Origin: Hyaloraphidium curvatum SAG 235-1
Taxonomy: Eukaryota > Fungi > Monoblepharomycota
NCBI GenBank assembly: GCA_025558095.1
Contig: JAIVFI010000007.1
Coordinates: 434,001-498,000 of the forward strand
DNA: 64,000 bases
Reading direction: 5' to 3'
The translations under genes were made by a program, and so were the position numbers. Below, piece after piece: positions 20,445 through 43,844 of this stretch (position 1 is its first letter; every line of letters starts with the position of its first letter). The notes under the pieces were generated by a model that searched no databases, was not told where the DNA came from, and saw nothing but the letters and a program-made list of their open reading frames with translations.

Positions 20445-21509
20445 TTAGCAGTCAAAGTCAATGCGGTATCCCGCCCCTTTGAAGCAAGCCCGTGCCATGG
20501 CCTCAGTAATCTGAGTGCACATGAAGTTGATAGCGTCCTTTGCGTCTGGAAACGTCCTGACAAAGTCCTCGTACCTCCTCATGAGCTGCTTGAGGTGAAA
20601 AAAGGAGTGCTCAATGGGGTCAAAGTCCGGGGAGTATGGTGACAGGAACTCGAGGAAAACTCCGAATCTCTCGCAGAGAGGACGAATGCGCGGATCCTTG
20701 TGGATGCTTGCATTGTCCAGAAGGATGACACTGAACGTTGGAATGCGTGGGAGGAGGTCCTTCTCGAGAAAGTCGCAAAAGTCAGCCCCTTTGATTGACC
20801 CCTCTTGAATGCGCCAAGCAACGTAGCCCTTCATGTCCATAGCGGCCAGGATGCTGTACTTTTGGCCCCTCACAAACGGAACGGAAGCAATCGCACGTAG
20901 CCCAATGGGAGCCCAGCCGTACTTGCGGATAAGCGTGTTCTCGTTGTACCCTGATTCGTCCACGGCTACGATCATTCGCGGGTCGTACTTTGATATCCTC
21001 AGCTGGAAATCAATGCGCTGTGCTTCGCAGCGCTCCTTTGCCGCCGTCTCGACGACCTTCCGGGTGATTCCGTTCCGGTGGAGGAGTTCCCAAAGAGCAC
21101 TGACGGAGAACTGTACTCCATAGGCATCCGAGACGCGCGAGACGATCTGATCCAGGTAGAGAGTGTTGTTTGCCACGACAAAGTCTACGACTTGCTGCTC
21201 CTGGCCCGGGCTCAGAAGGCGTTTGCGTCCTCGGCGGCCGGTGAGCGGGCTCGTCACGCAGCCCCACGTCGTGAAGCAGGTAACGACGCGGGCCACGCTC
21301 CGACGAGAAACCAAAAGCTCCCGTGCGATCTGCGCCTTTGGCTGGCCGTCTGCCCATTTGCAAATGATCCTCCACCGCAAAGCGTCAGGCAGGGCGCGAG
21401 TGGTTCCGACAGGAGACCGTGTCGAGCGGACGACTCTGTTTGCTCCATTAGAGCACGCCAGGTGGAAGGCAGCAACAAATATGAACCTTCTCCACCGGAT
21501 TGGCGGCAT
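20445..21509 (-). CDS. IS630/Tc1-type transposase, DD34E
   Basis: HTH (KAQIARELLVSRRSVARV), AVDESG, LLDNASIH-x-SPYSPDFDPIE with 34 residues between D and E; start approximate. Confidence 0.93.
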   Translation of the reverse strand: MPPIRWRRFIFVAAFHLACSNGANRVVRSTRSPVGTTRALPDALRWRIICKWADGQPKAQIARELLVSRRSVARVVTCFTTWGCVTSPLTGRRGRKRLLSPGQEQQVVDFVVANNTLYLDQIVSRVSDAYGVQFSVSALWELLHRNGITRKVVETAAKERCEAQRIDFQLRISKYDPRMIVAVDESGYNENTLIRKYGWAPIGLRAIASVPFVRGQKYSILAAMDMKGYVAWRIQEGSIKGADFCDFLEKDLLPRIPTFSVILLDNASIHKDPRIRPLCERFGVFLEFLSPYSPDFDPIEHSFFHLKQLMRRYEDFVRTFPDAKDAINFMCTQITEAMARACFKGAGYRIDFDC

Positions 21510-21861
21510 TTGTTCTCGAGCTCGGGGTGCACGGGCGATTCCAATTCGGGGCTGTCCGGTGTGGAGCGCGCGCGCGGGTAGGGTGGGCAAGCTTTGCCGA
21601 AACGGCCATAGCTGGGTGTGTACGTAGCCGTGCGTTGCACCTTTTGACCCTCCCTTCCAGCGTCACCCACCAAACGCCGGGCCACGCAACCCACGGACGC
21701 GCCGATTGCGGGCACTACGTTGGGCTCCCTATCATAATCCCGTTTCGTTTCGACGCGGGTGTCCACCACGAGAGCGCCAAGAGGGCGGGCCCGGGCAGCC
21801 CGGGACGCGCCGGTATTCAACATCACGCAACATACCCGGGACCGCTCCCGAAAACGCCGCG

Positions 21862-35244: not shown

Positions 35245-35460
35245 CTGGCCGGCGCTGGTAGCTACACTCTCAGAAACTGCTACTGTGCCCCCTGTGCCGC
35301 AATCCTTTGCGGCCTAGCAGCAATGTTCATCATCGAGCCTGCGAATAAAAGGCGGTCCCTGACGGACTCCACCTCGATCAAGCAAATGCAATGGCGCCCA
35401 CGCGGTGCATGGCACGCCAACTTGTAACTGTTTCCGCGGCCAGGTCAGCTTGCCGGCTTG
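35245..35460 (-). ncRNA. Candidate Fanzor omegaRNA (scaffold plus 3' guide)
   Basis: Lies at the Fanzor 3' end; nested stems CTGCTA(35277-82)/TAGCAG(35315-20) and GCCGCAA(35296-302)/TTGCGGC(35307-13) just inside a candidate TA element end at 35263-64; boundaries are guesses. Confidence 0.45.
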
Positions 35461-38400
35461 AGCTTCTTGACCGACCCATTCGCGGCGCTTGCGGCCGTAC
35501 GCTTGCGGCCTGTGGCGGCACCTGGAGCTCCCGGATCAGCTCGGGATGACGCTCGGGATGACCGTCGCGAATGCGAGCGCGCTCACCCGCGGACTTGCGC
35601 GGCGCTGCACCAGTCCCAGCTCGGAGCTTGGGCTGCGGCTTCGGCTTCCTGGTGTCCGGCCTGAACGGCCAGGGGCGCTCCCCTCCGGTGATGAGGCCGA
35701 ACCAGAAGAGGTGCTCCATGGAGTGCACACTGTTCACGTCGCGCATCCAGAAGCGGCGGCAGAGGGGACAGTATTTCACCCCGCGCACCTCGCCCTTGGA
35801 GCCGGGGTTCCGGATTCCGACGACATAGGTGGTCTTGCAGCTGGAAAGGACGTCAGGCGAGTCGGATGATCACGGCGGCTGCCGCACCAGCTGCACATTT
35901 GGGACGTGAGGTACTCGTTGACCAAGACCATGATCCCGGCCTTGGCCAGCTCCGCCCTGAAGCGAACGATCCGGGAGGCCGGGCCGCCCTTGCTCGCATG
36001 GCCGAATCGCGCGGCGCCGTATGCGATGGTCGTCTGTGGATCGTACTTGCCCGAATACGGGTTGCGACACATGTCGCGACAGATCCAGCTGAGGACCTCG
36101 CGGCGCCGGCGAATCGTGCGCACACGATCCAGGCTGCAGGATGCGTGAGCGAAGTCGTTGCCACAGGGATTGGCTTGCCCACCTCCGTTCTCCGGAACAG
36201 TAGACGTCCAGGATGCGGTCGAGTTGTGGCAGCAGCGCCCTCGTGTAGTCCGAGAAGGCTGCACTGTTCGTTGTGCGTTGAGAGGGCAGGTCGCGCTCGA
36301 AATCGTGGAGAGACTTCTGCACAGGGTTGCCCTCGCAATCGTTGACGTCCAGCATGGTGGTCCGCTTGGTGGCATTCAGACGCGCGGCCGCCTTGTCGTA
36401 GCCGCACAGGCGGCGGTCGAGCTTGGCCGGAACACCGAGGATGAGCTCCGGCAGCGCCGGGGTCCCCGCACGGCCGGCACCAGCGACCTCGCCCCACAGC
36501 TTGGCACCAAACTCGTCCGTGCAGCCGCCAGGGGTCGGGAACAGTTCGACGTTGCGCCGAGCGTGCTTCTCCGCCTTTGCAGCGTCGTTGGGGCGCGAAT
36601 CGGGCGCCGGCGGCTTGAACTCCGAGATCTTGGGCTCCCAGAGCGGGTGGTGTCTGCACGCTCCAGCGGCAGGCGGCGACGGACCGAAAGACCTTGCGAT
36701 CCGCTTAGTATCGGAGCAGGAGTGCTCTAGGTGGAAGCCGACGATCCTCCCGAAGCTGACGGAACCGTCGGCCTTGGACGGGTTCGCCCGCTTCGGCACG
36801 TAGTGCGACTTGGTGCCGTCGGCATTGGTCACGGTGATGCGCTCCGTTGTCCCCGGCAGATGACTGTTGGCGAAGTCGTAGCGTCCGTTCGGCCCGGGGT
36901 TCAGGCTCTTGGCAACGAGCCGCACGTCGACGCGGCGGTTGGCAACAGCCAGAAACCAGCGATTCGGATCCACGTCGACGACCCCGCCCTCCACTGGCTC
37001 GCCGCGCTCGGCCCGCTCGAACATTTCCGCCTGCGTCGGCATGTGCAGGAGATTGGGTGCCAGCACGGACACATGGTCAGGGCGGCTGAGGTAGCAGACG
37101 GGAATGCCAGTCTTGAAGTCGACCGGGGGCCGCGGCAACGGCTCGGCAGAACGCGGCGGGAGCGGAACCGGGGTCGGGGCCAGCTGAGGAGGTACGGGGG
37201 CAGCGAACTTGCCCTCGACCGTTACCGTCGGCGGCGACGGTTCGACCGCGCAAACGACGACTTCGGGAGGGAAGCAAGAAAGGAAGGGGGAAGGAAGTGG
37301 CGGCGAGAAGTCGGGGAAAGGAAGGGCCGCGCATGGATGCACAGAAGTCTCGGGCACCGAGTCACCGGGCGAGACAGTCGCGCAGGGAGGGTCGTTGTGC
37401 CCCGAGCTCAGGGGCGCGAACACGTTGGGCGCACAGTCCACGGCCGAAGGCATGGTGGTGAAGTTAAGGTTGCTGCTGGCACAATAAGAGGGCTCCCAAT
37501 CCATCGGGACCGATTCGTCCCCTTGGGCCGTCGCCTGCAGGTAGTAGACCATGCCCCCATGCCAAATCCGATTCTGGCCTGGAAAAGTGAGGATCCGATC
37601 AGCCTCCGAACCCGTGCGTCACTGAGCAAAATGCCCACCATCGAAGACAGCCATGTCGCACGGCGGGTCCGGATCGCCGTTTGGCAGCCATGGACCGGTG
37701 TAGAGCGGCGGGTAGGGATCCATCGGAACATCGCGAGGGAACGAAACATCCACTTCGAAAGCAGCAAGACCGGCGGGCACATGAGCTGCGGCGGGAACGG
37801 AGACGGTGGGCCGAGTTTGAACAGGAGGAGCCGGCGCGGCTGCTGGCGAATGCGCTGCGCGCTTTGGCGGCTCGACGTCCTGTGTCGTGTTTTGCCGCTC
37901 CTGCTGCTGCGACTGCTGGAACGAGACCTTTTCCACGAAGGAGACTTCTTCGTTAAGAATGCCCAGGGTGCTGCCGCAATGATAGATGCCCCGGACGCCG
38001 GAGTACCTCAGAACGTCCGCGGTGCGACGATAGATGGGCTGCGTGGCGGCGGCATGGCCCCTGGCCGAGACTTTGCCCTGCTGACGGAGGCGGAAGAGCC
38101 GGTCCTCGTTGACGAGTTGGTTGCCGCCGTTGAGCAGGTGGCCGAATAGGTAGTCCGAGTCAACGCGCGAGGTGTCGATGCCAGGCGCGACCTCCACGCC
38201 CAGCTTGGACAAAAACTCGGGCAGATCCGAGGCCGAGATGTAGACGGTCACGGGGGACAAGCTGATTTCGGCGACCGCAGCCCGAAGCTTCCGCCGCGCC
38301 CACGAGGCTGCCTTTTCCTTGCCGGTCTGGGCGGCGCCAAGCCCCGCCATCGCGGCGGCGGCGGCCGCCTTGCGCTCCCGCCGCTTCGTCTCCATGGTCT

Positions 38401-40568
38401 CCTTCTTGGCGAGTCCCTCGGGCCCCGGCTGCGGTCGGCGCTTACGGAAGCTCACGACGAACCCGTGCCATCGCTTCGGGGAGCCATTCTTGCTGTAATG
38501 CCGCTTCTCGACGCGGTGCGGCCGCCACGTGTTGCGGGCCCTCCTGGTCTTGTTCGAAGCCTCCCTGTCCTTGACCGGAGCAGTTGAAATGGTTGGGAAA
38601 GTTGGGGTTGAATCGGGGTCCCTGGCGGTGCTCGTCCTCCGCGCCGTTCCAGGTTCCGGCAGTGCAGCAGCCGCGGACGCGGCCCTCTTCTTCAGCGCCT
38701 CGTCCTGCTTTTCGAGCTCGTGCAGGGCGATGAAGCACATCTGGAAGCCGAAGGCTTCGTCCGCGGGGTTCGTGGATGAACGACACTTGTCGAGGTCATA
38801 CTCGCTCATCCGCGCCACCAGAAGCTTCTCGCTTTCCCAGTGGGGCCGGTTCTGCCCCACCAATGCCGCCGCCGCCGCCTCGTTCATGTCCTCGGCGTGC
38901 TCGGGGACCCAGAACTTGGGTTTCTGCTCTGTCGACCGAATCGTTGCCGTGGTCACGGCCGGGTAGCGGAAGGGGATGCTCCGAAGCTGTAGACGGTTTG
39001 CAACCACCCAGTCCCTCAGCTCCTGCAGCTCCACCTTTCGCAAGTCAGCCTTCTCCGCAGGTGAGGCCCGCGGCAGCGTCTCCCAAATGTTCTGGAGGTA
39101 GCTGCGCACCGCCTCCGTTTCCGCGTCGACCTTTCCGCGCGGCTTGCCCTTCGGCAGGTTCACGGTTCGCACCGCGGCCGCCACGGGGTTGCCCGCCTGC
39201 TTGTCCTGCAGGACCCGAGCGATAACCCTCCGCTGCGAAACGGTTGCCGGCACCGGCGGCTTCTGTTTTGAATCCCGGAGGTCAACGATCCGGTTCAGCT
39301 GCAAGCCTCTGAACGGCCGGAGGAGCCTCCCCAGCCCGACCCTGAGCTCCGTGGCCTCGGCGAGACCACAGCCAAATGCGCTTTCGAACGGGAAATTGGA
39401 GAAGTCGTCGTCCCCATATCCGAGCTTTGCCAGAGCGTAGCTGAGGATTGGGCCAATCCGCCTCCGGCCGACGCCCGCGTTCACCTCCCCGCGTAGGAAG
39501 CGACGGATGAGAACCTTGAGCGCAGTCAGCAGCCGCTGCGGCACGCTTCGAGCTCGGTTGAAAGCGACCTGCTCGGCATAGCGGAGCAAAGGTCCCTGCA
39601 CGAAAAGCGGCCTGAGCTTGTCGTACGTCTCGCCCACAAGTTCCCGCGCCTCTGCAAACGCAGCAACGGCCGCCTTGCGGACAAGCTTTGCCGCTGCGTT
39701 GTGCTCCGCGACGGTGAGAACGGACGGTGCGCCCTGATCAGCAACCTGCGAGAGATCGGGGGTGTCCTCAGCCGTAACCAAGTCCTCGTCCTCAATCTGA
39801 TCCAGCTCGCCGTGCAAGAAGTCGGCCAAGATCTTGGCGCCGGCCTGGTCCTCGGACATCGCGTCGTCATCGTCCTCGAAGTCAACGTCCTCGAGCACCT
39901 CGTCTCGATCGTCGTCGTTGGCTCCGAGGTCCGGACCGCCGTCCACAAGCTGCTCCACTCCTGGCGCCCCCGAATGGCCCGAGTATCTCGCCCCAGCACC
40001 GAGCCCGGCCGACTTCTGCTTTCCCGCGCGGCGGGTTCCAACAGCGGCGGACATCTGGCCGGCACCAAGCACGGCGTGGATGGCAATCTTTGCGACGTAA
40101 GACGGGGGAAAGCTGGCGAGCATGTCCTGCGTGACGGATCCGTCTTGGTCCGGGAGCTCTTTGTTGTGGATCTGCAACAAGATCTTGGTCCAGATGATCT
40201 TGAATAAGATGGCGGCGAGGGTGCAGGCCTTGGTGATGAGGGGCCCGACTTGCTCGTACGGGCCCCGCGCCCATGGGTGGCACACCTCGGCCGCCGGGAA
40301 CCACTCGACGGCCAGCTCCGTCATCGTCTTGTATCGCTCGTGCTGGGGGTCGCCAAGTGCGAGGAAGCCGTTGAGCGCGACCCACCGCCGCTTCGGAGAG
40401 CACTCCTGCCGGTGCCTCCCGCCACCGGCGAAACAGAAAGGGCAGGACGAGCCGCCGAGGCCCGTAGGAATGTTGGCTTTGAGGTTTGTCGACGCGAACG
40501 GGACAATGTAGTGTGCGTTGGCAATGAACTGGCCGAACGACGTGGTGAGATTCCTTGGGGCGACCAAA
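35378..40568 (-). CDS. Fanzor (Fanzor1-like, TnpB-related RuvC endonuclease) moiety
   Basis: RuvC-I VVDVDPN; IAYGAARFGHASKGGPA; RuvC-II VLVNEYLTSQMCSCC; zinc ribbon VRGVKYCPLC; RuvC-III FWMRDVNS. Confidence 0.9.
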
Positions 40569-43500
40569 CTGTCCGCGGCGGCGGTCAGCTTCGCATCGGT
40601 CCCAGGCATGCATGGAAAGCGCGGTGCAACTCACGCCCCACGGTGGTTCTCCTCGACATGCTGCCGGAACTCACTCTCGAGGTCGAACTGATGTCCCTTC
40701 CCCGGGCACGCTCTGCAGGTGAGGTGCGCACCCTTGACGTGGTGGAGGAGCCGAAGCTCGGCGTCATAGACACGCTCCCGCGCAGCTCCGTCAGCCACCA
40801 TCCCCGACGCCGCGACCTTGCGCCGCCGCCCAGCCTTCGCCGGGACTTCGCCTTCCACCTGCACACTGAAGGAACAGAGCGGACAATCCCGCTTCTGGAT
40901 ACGGCCGAAGTCCAGCAGTCCAACGGATTCCGCGTGGAAGTGGAGCTTGGCGTCGAGCGCGGTGCGCGCGGCCTCCTGCCGTGCTTCGGGGTTGCTACCG
41001 CGCACCAGCGCGGGCATACCGCACAAGTCCAGGGTAAAATCGCGCATCTTGGGCCCCGACTCCAGCAGCCGCAGCGTCACCATGGAAGAGTGTTCCCACC
41101 CGAGCTGCTCCGCCTTCAGGAACAGGGTTGCCAGCAGCTTATCGCCCTCTGCATCCAGTCCAGGTACGCCCGGGCTCATCTGGAAAAGGCCCGGGAACGA
41201 AAGCAGCTGCCGGGGCAAAAATCAGTTTGGGATTGCGGGGCTGCTCGACAGGAGATTGCACACCAGCACGGGAACGGAACCCGGATTCTCGATGGCGAGG
41301 GCCTCCTCGTTGGCCGCCATCGGGTTCCACACCGCCCAATCGAAGAATCTCTTGCGCCCTTCCGCATTGCGACTCGCCACACTATCCGGCAAACGCGCCG
41401 CCATGACTATCTTGCATCGCTGCGGGAGGGAGAGCGAAGCAAGGAAGTACTCCAGGCCGGGCGACGCATCAAAAAGCGAGCGGCCCTGCTGGTCCTTCAG
41501 CGTGCGGCACGCTTCCTCCAGTATCTGCCTAAGGTTCCTTGGCAGAGACTCGGTCGAAGCCGCGCGTTCGAGGTACTCCAACCGACAGACCTTCGAAATG
41601 GGCTGGTGAACATAATGCAGAGCACGACGTGCTGTCTCGGATGTTTCGAAGCTGTCCATGCGTGCCCTCCCGGCCGGGCCGAGCTGTCCCCAGAGAGAAA
41701 CAGCGAGCGCACGTAGCCATTCTGGTCCACGACCGTTTCGTACAAGGCCCGATAGGAGGATGGCGAACCTCTCGTCCAGCACGGTGTCGTTTGCAAGGGC
41801 TGAGAGCGGAAACAGCTGTTTCAACGCGGCGCGGCTGGCTTTCTTGAACGAGACGTTAAGTTCCGGTGGGACGTCGGCATAGCGGGCGAGGTTATCCAGC
41901 TGGGAGATGGAGACGTCGGGGGCTGACGGCGGTCCCAGATCCGCGCCATCGTCCGCGGGGCGGAAAAAGGGGGGTGCCGGTGCGTCTGGTCCGATCAGAC
42001 TGGGGGCGACCCGGCGCCGCCGGGCGACGATGTTCCGGAGGCGCGCGACGAAAAGCTCGCGCTCCAGCTTGTACCCCCGACCCGATGCCACCCGCTGACA
42101 GATGAACTCAAAAGGAGCTTCACCGAGGTTGGAGAGGCCCCCGAGGACGTCCGCAGCGTCGAAGCCCGCGGTCCTTTGAGCGGAGTCCGTGAAGTCGTTC
42201 CACGGCCCAAAGAATTCCCTCGCCGAACCATCGACGTGGAGAACTTCCCTCAGGATCAGCAAAGTGTGCTTTTGGTGCGGGTTGATGTGGGCGACGCCGA
42301 GGTTGCGAGCCTGCTCGGAGTGGGCGTTGTCGTGAGTCAGCGCGGTCTGCATGCCCGATGCGCAACCGTCATGGCAGTCCACCTCTTCAGCGAGCCGCTC
42401 GGCCGCGTTTGCTTCGGTCTGGGTCGCTGCTGCGCCCTCCATCGCGGAAGGGCACGTCTGAGGAGCCGGAGAAGCAAAGGCAGAGATCTGACCTTGTAGT
42501 GTGACCTTCCGCGCCACACATTTGCCGGCGGACGCGGATTCCGCGATGCGCACAAACTCAGCCTCGCTTAGCTTCAAGCAGTGCCGGAACGTCGCCATCA
42601 GATCGCCGTGGCCGACGATTTGAATGGCCCTCTCGATGGACCGGACGAGATCCGGCACCGTCCTGGGGCAGTCCCGCCTCACGAGGTTCTTGATCGTGGC
42701 AAACACGTACTCGGTCGGGTTAAATTCCGGCGATCTCGGTCGCAGGTAGATGAGGCTCAGATTGTTGGCCTTTGCTACGGCCTGGACCGCAAGGAACGAC
42801 TTGCCCGAGAGGTTCTTTATTATTGCCGTGCCGTCCGTGGTCTTCCTTGCCCGCAGAGGAGAGCCGTGGAAACCCGCATTGTCCAGGATAACGCCCAGGG
42901 ACTCGGGCCCACAAGCCCCGGCGCGAATAGTCTTGAGAAAAGCACAGAACCTCTCGGTGTTCATGTTGCCGCTGTAGATCTGGTACGAGATCACGTTTCC
43001 AGTGTGATTACCGGGTCGCGGAGTGGGTGAGATGGCGAGGCAAAGGGTCACCTTGGGGCCCCGGTTCCCTGGCAGGTATACGACGGCGGGAGTCCCCTTC
43101 TCCGAGTAGCCGAAGCGCCCCGGATCGTTGAGTTGGAATGAGGACTCGTCCAAGGCACCTAGGCGCCCCAAATCAAGGGAAGTGACCCTCTCGTGGAACA
43201 TGCGGTGCCGCTCGGGTTGTTTCAGGGCTTCGGCGCTCTTAATGGTGAGCTTCTTCCTCGTGACCCTGTTGGCCTTCAGCAGCCGCGAGATATGCTGCTG
43301 CGACACCAAAACGCCAAACTTTTCCGCCAGGTCAGCAGCGAGCTCCCTTTGCGTCACGCGGACGCGAGCTTTGGCCTCGTCAACTACGTGCCGGACCATT
43401 TCCTCGGACACCTTGCGGAAGGCCTTGCGGGGATGGTCCGGAACGGTCTGAGCCCCACATCGGCGGATCCAACGGAAATACGTCGTTCGGTGAATTGCGA

Positions 43501-43579
43501 GTACAGCAGCAATCTCGTCCGGGTCAAGCTTGCCGGTCTGCTTGAGCCGAACCGCGGTTTCTGGCCCGCTCAGAAGCAT
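35378..43579 (-). CDS. Predicted ~2640-aa transposase-zinc finger-Fanzor fusion; exons 43579-41264, 41206-40635, 40568-37639, 37578-36183, 36133-35888, 35840-35378
   Basis: Five GT-AG introns (57, 66, 60, 49, 47 nt) with CTGAC/CTGAT/CTCAC branch-like sites; all joins in frame; exon total 7923 nt = 2641 codons. Confidence 0.65.
41222..43579 (-). CDS. IS630/Tc1-type DDE transposase moiety (785-aa product if intron 1 is retained)
   Basis: HTH (EIAAVLAIHRTTYFRW), winged HTH (VSQQHISRLLK..TRKK), ALDESSF, ILDNAGFH, SPEFNPTE. Confidence 0.92.
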   Translation of the reverse strand: MLLSGPETAVRLKQTGKLDPDEIAAVLAIHRTTYFRWIRRCGAQTVPDHPRKAFRKVSEEMVRHVVDEAKARVRVTQRELAADLAEKFGVLVSQQHISRLLKANRVTRKKLTIKSAEALKQPERHRMFHERVTSLDLGRLGALDESSFQLNDPGRFGYSEKGTPAVVYLPGNRGPKVTLCLAISPTPRPGNHTGNVISYQIYSGNMNTERFCAFLKTIRAGACGPESLGVILDNAGFHGSPLRARKTTDGTAIIKNLSGKSFLAVQAVAKANNLSLIYLRPRSPEFNPTEYVFATIKNLVRRDCPRTVPDLVRSIERAIQIVGHGDLMATFRHCLKLSEAEFVRIAESASAGKCVARKVTLQGQISAFASPAPQTCPSAMEGAAATQTEANAAERLAEEVDCHDGCASGMQTALTHDNAHSEQARNLGVAHINPHQKHTLLILREVLHVDGSAREFFGPWNDFTDSAQRTAGFDAADVLGGLSNLGEAPFEFICQRVASGRGYKLERELFVARLRNIVARRRRVAPSLIGPDAPAPPFFRPADDGADLGPPSAPDVSISQLDNLARYADVPPELNVSFKKASRAALKQLFPLSALANDTVLDERFAILLSGLVRNGRGPEWLRALAVSLWGQLGPAGRARMDSFETSETARRALHYVHQPISKVCRLEYLERAASTESLPRNLRQILEEACRTLKDQQGRSLFDASPGLEYFLASLSLPQRCKIVMAARLPDSVASRNAEGRKRFFDWAVWNPMAANEEALAIENPGSVPVLVCNLLSSSPAIPN

Positions 43580-43844
43580 GTTTTGGCCGTGCCGTTCCCC
43601 GACGCGACGCAGGAGGCACCACGCGCCTTTTGCGATGGAGACTGTGCTCTAGCGGTTGCAAATTCGCACGCGGCGACTCCGGCAAGCTCGAGTAGCGGGG
43701 ACCTGTGTGTGAAACGAGGAGCGCCGGGCAGCCAACTGGGAAACCCCTTACCCCCACACTGCCACCGCGTTCTGCGGGCCGCCGAGCGCCGGACGGTGTC
43801 CGAGGCAGCGAGTTCCGGCCGCGGTAGCGGCGCCCTGGCCCGAG

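What the first reader, a model, noticed from the sequence alone, without database searches (positions are those of the whole stretch)
35378..43579. Single spliced gene fusing an IS630/Tc1 DDE transposase to a Fanzor RNA-guided nuclease (~2640 aa)
Seen: six apparently separate ORFs are linked by five short GT-AG introns matching host intron style: 41263-41207 (GTGTGC..CTGAT..CAG), 40634-40569 (GTGAGT..GCTGAC..CAG), 37638-37579, 36182-36134 and 35887-35841. Every join keeps frame (VPVL|LLSF, HRGA|LVAPRN, FDG|QNRI, ERS|LDRV, MCSC|CKTT). Known: Fanzors are eukaryotic TnpB relatives, usually a separate ORF beside transposases of several superfamilies, including Tc1/mariner. Inference: here both activities could sit on one polypeptide, tethering an RNA-guided DNA-binding/cleaving module to a cut-and-paste transposase. 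That architecture could support RNA-guided integration or excision-coupled homing in a eukaryote.
Basis: partly seen in the sequence, partly recalled or inferred. Interest (0 to 1): 0.95.

Follow-up and report, generated by a model that had tools for sequence, protein, structure and literature searches.

The report
Site-targeting transposase-Fanzor fusion transposon
A young, expressed fungal jumping gene makes its cut-and-paste enzyme and a CRISPR-like RNA-guided nuclease from one spliced gene, and it lands in one orientation a fixed distance from a short DNA word instead of at the usual TA, so it is a candidate for aimed, possibly RNA-aimed, gene insertion in a eukaryote.

Summary
Confirmed and extended. 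All five introns are GT-AG, keep frame (2,640 aa) and are spliced at exactly these coordinates in RNA contigs. Exon 1 is an IS630 transposase with intact DDE. Exons 4-6 carry an intact Fanzor-type RuvC triad. The gene fills an 8.5-kb element with 10 near-identical copies; a second family (5 copies) and two diverged copies share the layout. This copy lacks 57 in-frame codons.

Beyond the finding: the element carries its own terminal TA/TC and duplicates a variable 2 bp outside it (three predictions confirmed). Eight of ten insertions lie 21 bp downstream of an oriented motif, about AAGGGRYTT; all five family-2 copies lie beside a different motif, GCGYCGATC. Integration is therefore sequence-directed at fixed spacing.

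The reader of the motif is not shown: an element-encoded protein domain, with Fanzor doing ordinary homing (about 50%); a fixed internal guide RNA (about 30%; candidate at 35309-35300); or a host factor (about 12%). One full-length transcript is not proven. No paper describing this was found. The scan reported this family and its targeting before, on other copies (s1-701608).

The parts
35259..43717 (-). Whole element, 8,459 bp here (about 8,630 bp in other copies), including its own terminal dinucleotides (TC left, TA right)
   Evidence: Ends from copy-to-copy boundaries; 10 copies at least 99.6% identical
43718..43719 (-). Left copy of the 2-bp target-site duplication (CC)
   Evidence: Sequence; rule tested in other copies
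35257..35258 (-). Right copy of the 2-bp target-site duplication (CC)
   Evidence: Sequence
43741..43750 (-). Host-flank target motif TAAGGGGTTT, 21 bp before the duplication; same offset and orientation in 8 of 10 copies
   Evidence: 0 of 3,000 random alignments reach it; leave-one-out
43690..43717 (-). Left end, imperfect inverted repeat with inner GCTACT box; indel hot spot 13-18 nt inside the end
35259..35286 (-). Right end, imperfect inverted repeat ending in GTAGC-TA
41264..43579 (-). Exon 1 (aa 1-772): HTH and IS630/Tc1 DDE transposase (D144, D233, E290; DD56E spacing), then about 420 aa of unassigned linker
   Evidence: Pfam DDE_3 E=5e-15; NCBIfam IS630 122 bits, cut-off 100; residues; linker 33% identical in family 2
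41207..41263 (-). Intron 1 (57 nt); if retained, gives a 785-aa transposase-only product
40635..41206 (-). Exon 2: CxxC and C2H2-like zinc motifs
   Evidence: 38% identical in family 2; C2H2 part matches L027 at E=4.5e-4
40569..40634 (-). Intron 2 (66 nt)
37639..40568 (-). Exon 3 (976 aa): no database match; probably holds the expanded Fanzor REC/WED region (inferred from position only)
   Evidence: all blank or not significant
37579..37638 (-). Intron 3 (60 nt)
36183..37578 (-). Exon 4: Pro-rich stretch (171 nt missing in this copy at 37445/37446), then RuvC-I aspartate in DPN (D2143, 36970-36968) and a long insertion
36134..36182 (-). Intron 4 (49 nt), same position in L027 and L028
35888..36133 (-). 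Exon 5: RuvC-II glutamate (E2478) just before the zinc finger; 84% identical in family 2, the highest of the regions compared
35841..35887 (-). Intron 5 (47 nt), splits the first CxxC of the zinc finger
35378..35840 (-). Exon 6: second CxxC, RuvC-III aspartate (D2521), basic tail, stop
   Evidence: (the matching stretch of relatives scores above the PF07282 cut-off)
35347..35383 (-). Hairpin just after the stop, 92% identical in family 2; candidate omega-RNA scaffold part
35296..35313 (-). Small palindrome holding CAAAGGATTG (35309-35300), the element's best match to the 10-nt target motif; candidate fixed guide or internal protein-binding site
   Evidence: P about 0.004 for this 119-nt region; not significant for the whole element

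Best explanation
An active cut-and-paste transposon family whose single spliced gene encodes HTH-DDE transposase, about 1,700 aa of zinc-binding and helical domains, and a catalytically intact Fanzor1-type nuclease. SHOWN: splicing, open frame, copy number, ends, variable 2-bp duplication outside an element-borne TA/TC, and an oriented family-specific motif at fixed spacing. INFERRED: (1) a DNA-binding part of the same polypeptide (the expanded Fanzor TAM-reading region or the zinc domains) binds the motif and holds the DDE core about 20 bp downstream, so the transposase no longer needs TA; the old TA became part of the element. (2) The Fanzor keeps the usual job: an omega-RNA running through the right end and TA takes its guide from the right flank and cuts the emptied donor site, prompting repair from an intact copy. 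The fusion would let one motif reader serve both target choice and empty-site recognition, much as TnpA target and TnpB TAM coincide in IS200/IS605. Confidence: fusion gene about 0.9; sequence-directed integration about 0.95; this whole mechanism about 0.5.
For: Splicing and frame. Every close Fanzor exon in the genome (17) has a same-strand transposase 7.5-8 kb upstream. Motif significance and a different motif in family 2. Duplication outside TA; TA versus TC follows copy ancestry, 8 shared SNPs. The RuvC-II exon is 84% identical between families while the middle is 33-38%, so the nuclease core is under strong selection and the parts that could switch specificity have diverged. Fanzor1 scaffolds include the right-hand TA (PMC10711439, PMC13565253), a reason to keep it. 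No guide-only short copies were found. The transposase has a 22-aa insert after the second aspartate and R(S/T)PE for YSPD in both families, compatible with altered target contacts.
Against: No DNA-binding domain was identified in the middle region (models at pLDDT 45-58 gave no fold). No conserved TAM lies directly next to the insertion point, which ordinary homing needs, so a distant motif or an excision footprint must stand in for it. The best motif match inside the element lies in the expected omega-RNA region. No omega-RNA was observed. Copies L004 and L007 lack the motif, and L007 breaks the duplication rule.
Confidence: 0.5

Rival explanations
1. RNA-guided transposition. The Fanzor part carries a fixed guide encoded inside the right end (CAAAGGAUUG region), forms a short seed-only R-loop at matching sites without cutting, and the tethered DDE core inserts about 20 bp further on: a one-protein eukaryotic counterpart of CRISPR-associated transposons.
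For: Fixed spacing, one orientation, loss of TA, and a change of motif between related families. The top-scoring 10-nt motif match in 8.5 kb lies in the 119-nt 3' non-coding region, 40 nt after a conserved hairpin; P about 0.004 for that region. Targets L003 and L008 match it at 12 of 13 and 12 of 14 positions.
Against: The candidate disagrees with the target consensus at -32 (targets G in 6 of 10, A in 1 of 10) and at -26. It drops out of the top ten with wider motif windows, and a match this good anywhere in the element has P about 0.27. It sits in a stem-loop. The exact family-2 motif is absent from the two family-2 copies that could be checked and an anchored search was blank. The RuvC triad is intact, whereas Cas12k and the TnpB-family proteins that worked in engineered guided transposition are nuclease-dead; dead TnpB and Fanzor2 fusions failed (10.1101/2025.08.27.672191).
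Confidence: 0.3
2. Host-factor tethering. The fusion protein binds a host transcription factor at promoters, and each family uses a different factor.
For: Several insertions lie 55-455 bp from the start of an outward-facing gene: eIF3h and RPS10, and by eye a SEC63-like gene in the window, a BUD32-like kinase and an SH3 protein.
Against: Neither motif is clearly enriched in the genome once local composition is modelled: 437 observed against 290-380 expected; 9 against 4-6. Survival in promoters is expected from selection in a gene-dense genome. Two sister families would need two different factors.
Confidence: 0.12
3. Two products rather than one. A separate Fanzor mRNA starts inside exon 1 (for example at ATG 42442), and the transposase is made from an intron-1-retaining or prematurely ended transcript.
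For: Introns 1 and 2 contain in-frame stops.
Against: The transposase frame runs 420 codons past its catalytic domain without a stop in both families. The spliced intron-1 joint has the same depth as its surroundings. 83% of sampled words of the whole stretch are in run X1.
Confidence: 0.08

Closest known systems
Fanzor1-carrying Tc1/mariner elements (PGv-1, PUl-1; SPu-1 with TA duplications; Bao and Jurka 2013, PMC3627910)
   Same: Mariner/IS630-type DDE transposase and Fanzor in one TIR-bounded element, transposase first, Fanzor next to the right end.
   Different: Those are described as encoding separate proteins and are flanked by TA duplications; SPu-1 Fanzor is 633 aa. Here there is one spliced frame of about 2,700 aa, an element-borne TA, a variable 2-bp duplication and motif-directed insertion.
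IS630-linked TnpB (DDE-6 branch; Altae-Tran et al. 2023, PMC10691335)
   Same: IS630 DDE transposase paired with a TnpB-family nuclease between symmetrical ends.
   Different: Prokaryotic or giant-virus loci with separate genes; no fusion or fixed-distance targeting in the passages read.
CRISPR-associated transposons (type V-K Cas12k) and engineered TniQ-TldR fusions (10.1101/2025.08.27.672191)
   Same: Oriented insertion at a set distance from a recognised sequence by a DDE transposase, with a TnpB-family protein in the system.
   Different: Bacterial Tn7-like, several proteins (TnsB, TnsC, TniQ), nuclease-dead effector. Here one eukaryotic polypeptide, Tc1-type core, intact RuvC, and RNA guidance unproven.
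IS200/IS605 TnpA-TnpB restorative homing (reviewed in PMC13565253)
   Same: Target motif 5' of the left end; nuclease and omega-RNA region at the right end.
   Different: There the motif directly abuts the left end and there is no duplication; here it is 21 bp away and a DDE enzyme duplicates 2 bp.

Membership tests
IS630/Tc1/mariner | HTH plus DDE_3 catalytic domain with intact triad | tested here: met
   (D144, D233, E290)
IS630/Tc1/mariner | DD34-35E-type spacing | tested here: not met
   DD56E, with a 22-aa insert shared by family 2; a plain Tc1-like ORF in the same window has the short spacing
IS630/Tc1/mariner | Terminal inverted repeats | tested here: met
   Imperfect, about two thirds of 24-26 positions, shared inner GCTACT
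IS630/Tc1/mariner | TA target-site duplication | tested here: not met
   Left dinucleotide is TC in 6 copies and TA in 4 and follows ancestry; the duplication is CC, TG, TG, GC outside it
Fanzor (TnpB family) | RuvC-I D, [TS]S-x-x-C4 zinc finger, RD motif | tested here: met
   D2143; TSQMCS/C..CPLC; RD with D2521. Relatives' matching stretch: PF07282 E=5e-9, above cut-off; exons 5 and 6 match it at E=2e-27 and 2e-23. D-to-finger distance is about 340 aa, longer than the 125-275 given in PMC3627910.
Fanzor (TnpB family) | DPG at RuvC-I and alternative glutamate about six residues before the zinc finger (PMC10711439) | tested here: inconclusive
   Alternative glutamate present (E2478, first Cys 2485); RuvC-I reads DPN, not DPG, here and in three relatives
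Fanzor1 clade | Placement in the Fanzor1 tree and Fanzor1 fold | tested here: inconclusive
   No tree built; no PDB hit by sequence or from a low-confidence model
Fanzor (TnpB family) | omega-RNA spanning the right end with about 15 nt of flank as guide; TAM-dependent cleavage | not testable with these tools
   Only contigs were available; no Rfam match; a conserved hairpin follows the stop
RNA-guided transposons (CAST-like) | Oriented insertion at fixed distance from a recognised sequence | tested here: met
RNA-guided transposons (CAST-like) | Element-encoded guide that matches the targets | tested here: inconclusive
   Candidate in family 1 with two discordant positions; none found for family 2, whose 3' end could not be read
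RNA-guided transposons (CAST-like) | Nuclease-dead effector | tested here: not met
   D-E-D triad intact and conserved

The most novel reading that the evidence does not exclude
A natural one-protein RNA-guided transposase of a eukaryote: the fused Fanzor, loaded with a guide encoded inside the element's right end, picks the site, and the Tc1-type core inserts about 20 bp away with a 2-bp duplication of any sequence; changing the guide changes the target, as between the two families.
Probability: 0.3. Interest if true: 0.99.

Novelty: new variant of a known kind. Interest (0 to 1): 0.9.

Why it matters
Programmable insertion of large DNA in eukaryotes is an open goal, and I found no report of a natural eukaryotic RNA-guided DNA transposase. 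This element is young (copies at least 99.6% identical, most with open frames in the exons checked), expressed, correctly spliced and, by its flanks, site-directed, so the question can be tested directly by swapping about 10 bases or a domain between two sister families. If the targeting is by protein, it is still a Tc1-type transposase that has dropped the TA rule for fixed-distance targeting, and it suggests how a DDE transposon can keep its target choice and its Fanzor's recognition site matched.

Tried and rejected
So right flanks of other copies and the family-2 3' end were not read. After that I used coordinate-only searches and short patterns as yes/no tests (one search had one two-way base).

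Blank results: homologue searches for exon 3 and for long IS630 proteins; Atlas; PDB by sequence and fold; metagenome and viral contigs; tRNA and Rfam genes near insertions. These blanks do not show absence.

Rejected: the 16-fold excess of CGCGTCGATC over its reversed control as proof of a host motif, because Markov models predict most of it; a TA duplication; a conserved TAM next to the left end; targeting of tRNA genes; guide-only ghost copies.
Full report
OBSERVATION. The five introns are at the stated coordinates, all GT..AG, and the six exons give 2,640 codons and a stop. Run X1, which holds 83% of the sampled words of the stretch, has contigs that skip exactly these five introns at depths like the neighbouring exons; precise intron removal shows that the run is RNA. 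The same contig holds 171 extra in-frame letters at 37445/37446. All nine other copies have them, so this copy carries a 57-codon deletion in a Pro-rich stretch. Only 35700-41650 was laid, and contigs cannot prove one transcript.

PROTEIN. Exon 1 scores above the IS630 transposase cut-off, with D144, D233 and E290. The D-E spacing is 56 because of a 22-aa insert that family 2 shares almost letter for letter. Exons 4-6 hit nothing in Pfam alone, but three distant relatives of exon 4 were found. Their contigs continue into a stretch that matches exons 5 and 6 (E=2e-27, 2e-23) and scores above the cut-off of PF07282, the TnpB/Cas12f zinc-finger domain. The triad is D2143 (DPN), E2478 just before the zinc finger, and D2521; the glutamate position is the Fanzor signature of PMC10711439, while DPN departs from DPG. 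L027, from another sample, has the exon-2 zinc motif, a long exon and the RuvC exons in the same order, with intron 4 at the same place; its contig ends before any transposase. The 1,700 aa in the middle remain unassigned.

ELEMENT. The 31.9-Mb genome holds 10 copies at least 99.6% identical, a second family of five copies, and two more diverged copies on contig C2; all 17 have transposase and Fanzor exons on one strand 7.5-8 kb apart. Between families identity is 64% in the transposase, 33-38% in the linker and exon 2, 47% in exon 4 and 84% in exon 5. Family 2 keeps the open frame from transposase to intron 1, and that intron's position and phase. Among family-1 copies, in the exons available, one has a stop and one a frameshift. 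The ends are imperfect inverted repeats, GTTTCACACACAG on the left and GAGAGTGTAGC on the right.

TARGET-SITE DUPLICATION. All right ends that could be followed are trailed by TA, but the left end is preceded by TC in six copies and TA in four, and the four TA copies share eight SNPs. The dinucleotide is therefore inherited with the element. The two bases outside it repeat on the other side: CC in the window. I predicted TG for two copies and GC for one from their left flanks, and fixed-pattern searches found exactly those copies and no others. Alignment ends fit four further copies (L004, L005, L006, L009), conflict for one (L007) and are silent for one.

TARGET MOTIF. Aligned on the left end, ten family-1 flanks share a motif at -35 to -26 (about NAAGGGRYTT; T at -27 in 10 of 10). 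Its information content is 9.5-10 bits; the maximum in 3,000 random alignments is 6.2. In leave-one-out tests five copies rank their site first among about 3,000 windows, three more are in the top 3%, and L004 and L007 do not fit. All five family-2 flanks hold a different word, GCGYCGATC, at the same offset in the three copies with intact TA and closer in two copies that lost 3 and 15 bases of flank; it occurs once in the 64-kb window. Neither motif is clearly enriched genome-wide. Several copies sit just upstream of outward-facing genes. In the window the element splits a short divergent promoter between a SEC63-like gene (ATG 43845) and a histone-fold gene (ATG 35217), both named by eye.

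MECHANISM. The 2-bp stagger says the DDE core integrates; fixed spacing and orientation say something holds it at a ruler's length from the motif; that makes a TA requirement impractical, which fits the absorbed TA and the altered catalytic loop (inference). For RNA: the best 10-nt match in the element, CAAAGGATTG at 35309-35300, lies in the 3' non-coding region after a hairpin that is 92% conserved in family 2, P about 0.004 for that region. Against: two positions disagree with most targets, the rank depends on the window chosen, no family-2 counterpart was found, and the nuclease core is intact and the most conserved part compared. For protein: the middle region diverged as the motif changed, an internal imperfect site is as easily a binding site, and the kept right-hand TA is what a normal Fanzor1 scaffold includes (PMC10711439, PMC13565253). 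I put protein readout with ordinary homing at 0.5, a fixed guide at 0.3, a host factor at 0.12 and separate products at 0.08.

UNEXPLAINED. Three of four family-1 copies with left TA carry deletions starting 13-18 nt inside the left end, one joined through a short inverted piece; none of six TC copies does, apart from one added C in the window copy. In family 2 the three TA copies have deletions about 31 nt inside, and the other two lost the TA. These look like repaired breaks and hint at self-cleavage that needs the left TA, but the copies are related and no guide source is known.

LITERATURE. Fanzor1 in mariner elements is described as a separate protein with TA duplications (PMC3627910); IS630-linked TnpB occurs as separate genes (PMC10691335); a 2026 review lists no fusion in the passages searched (PMC13565253). 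Eight searches found no report of a fusion or of fixed-distance targeting; the library lacks most subscription papers.

EARLIER SCAN NOTES. Consulted only after the motif and duplication results. Other copies were noted many times, and follow-up s1-701608 reached the same site-targeting reading; this is the same family, not independent support. Notes name the host as the fungus Hyaloraphidium curvatum, which I did not verify; the introns look fungal.

VERDICT. Real, expressed, young and unusual: a new variant of Fanzor-carrying IS630/Tc1 elements, with about a 30% chance of being a categorically new RNA-guided eukaryotic transposase. Interest 0.9.

Noticed in passing
window 43697-43703; L008, L009, L010; L021-L025 left ends: Deletions cluster just inside the left end in copies that keep the left TA, and are absent from TC copies; possible scars of self-cleavage, with TC as an escape variant.
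   Followed up: partly
window 20445-21590 (-): A plain IS630/Tc1 transposase ORF of about 350 aa with ordinary catalytic spacing and no Fanzor match nearby; similar copies on C19 and C2. Its ends were not found.
   Followed up: partly
G000:C2:427078-435543 and C2:397656-406415: Two diverged transposase-Fanzor copies with the same 7.5-8 kb layout, probably further families; their flanks would give new motif-versus-guide tests.
   Followed up: no
G000:C5:421650-422693, C23:314189-315232, C13:321467-322540: Related transposases (45-47% identical) in long open frames (822, 913, 446 aa) with no detected Fanzor exon; may be fusions with more distant partners.
   Followed up: no
L026:160-1401: Intronless relative from a metagenome with two in-frame TAG codons in an otherwise well-conserved RuvC region; pseudogene or a host with TAG reassigned.
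   Followed up: no
L027:3470-4010: The relative's long exon holds a stretch that reads like an OTU-type protease (GDCF...C, H-YN) by eye, absent from the window's exon 3; the middle of these proteins may swap domains.
   Followed up: no
window 43845 (+) and 35217 (-): The element sits in a divergent promoter of about 170 bp; its transcript points into the histone-fold gene that starts 42 bp past the right end.
   Followed up: no
window 41207-41263 and 40569-40634: Introns 1 and 2 hold in-frame stops, so retention would give transposase-only products of 785 or about 963 aa; no retained form was singled out in the contigs.
   Followed up: partly
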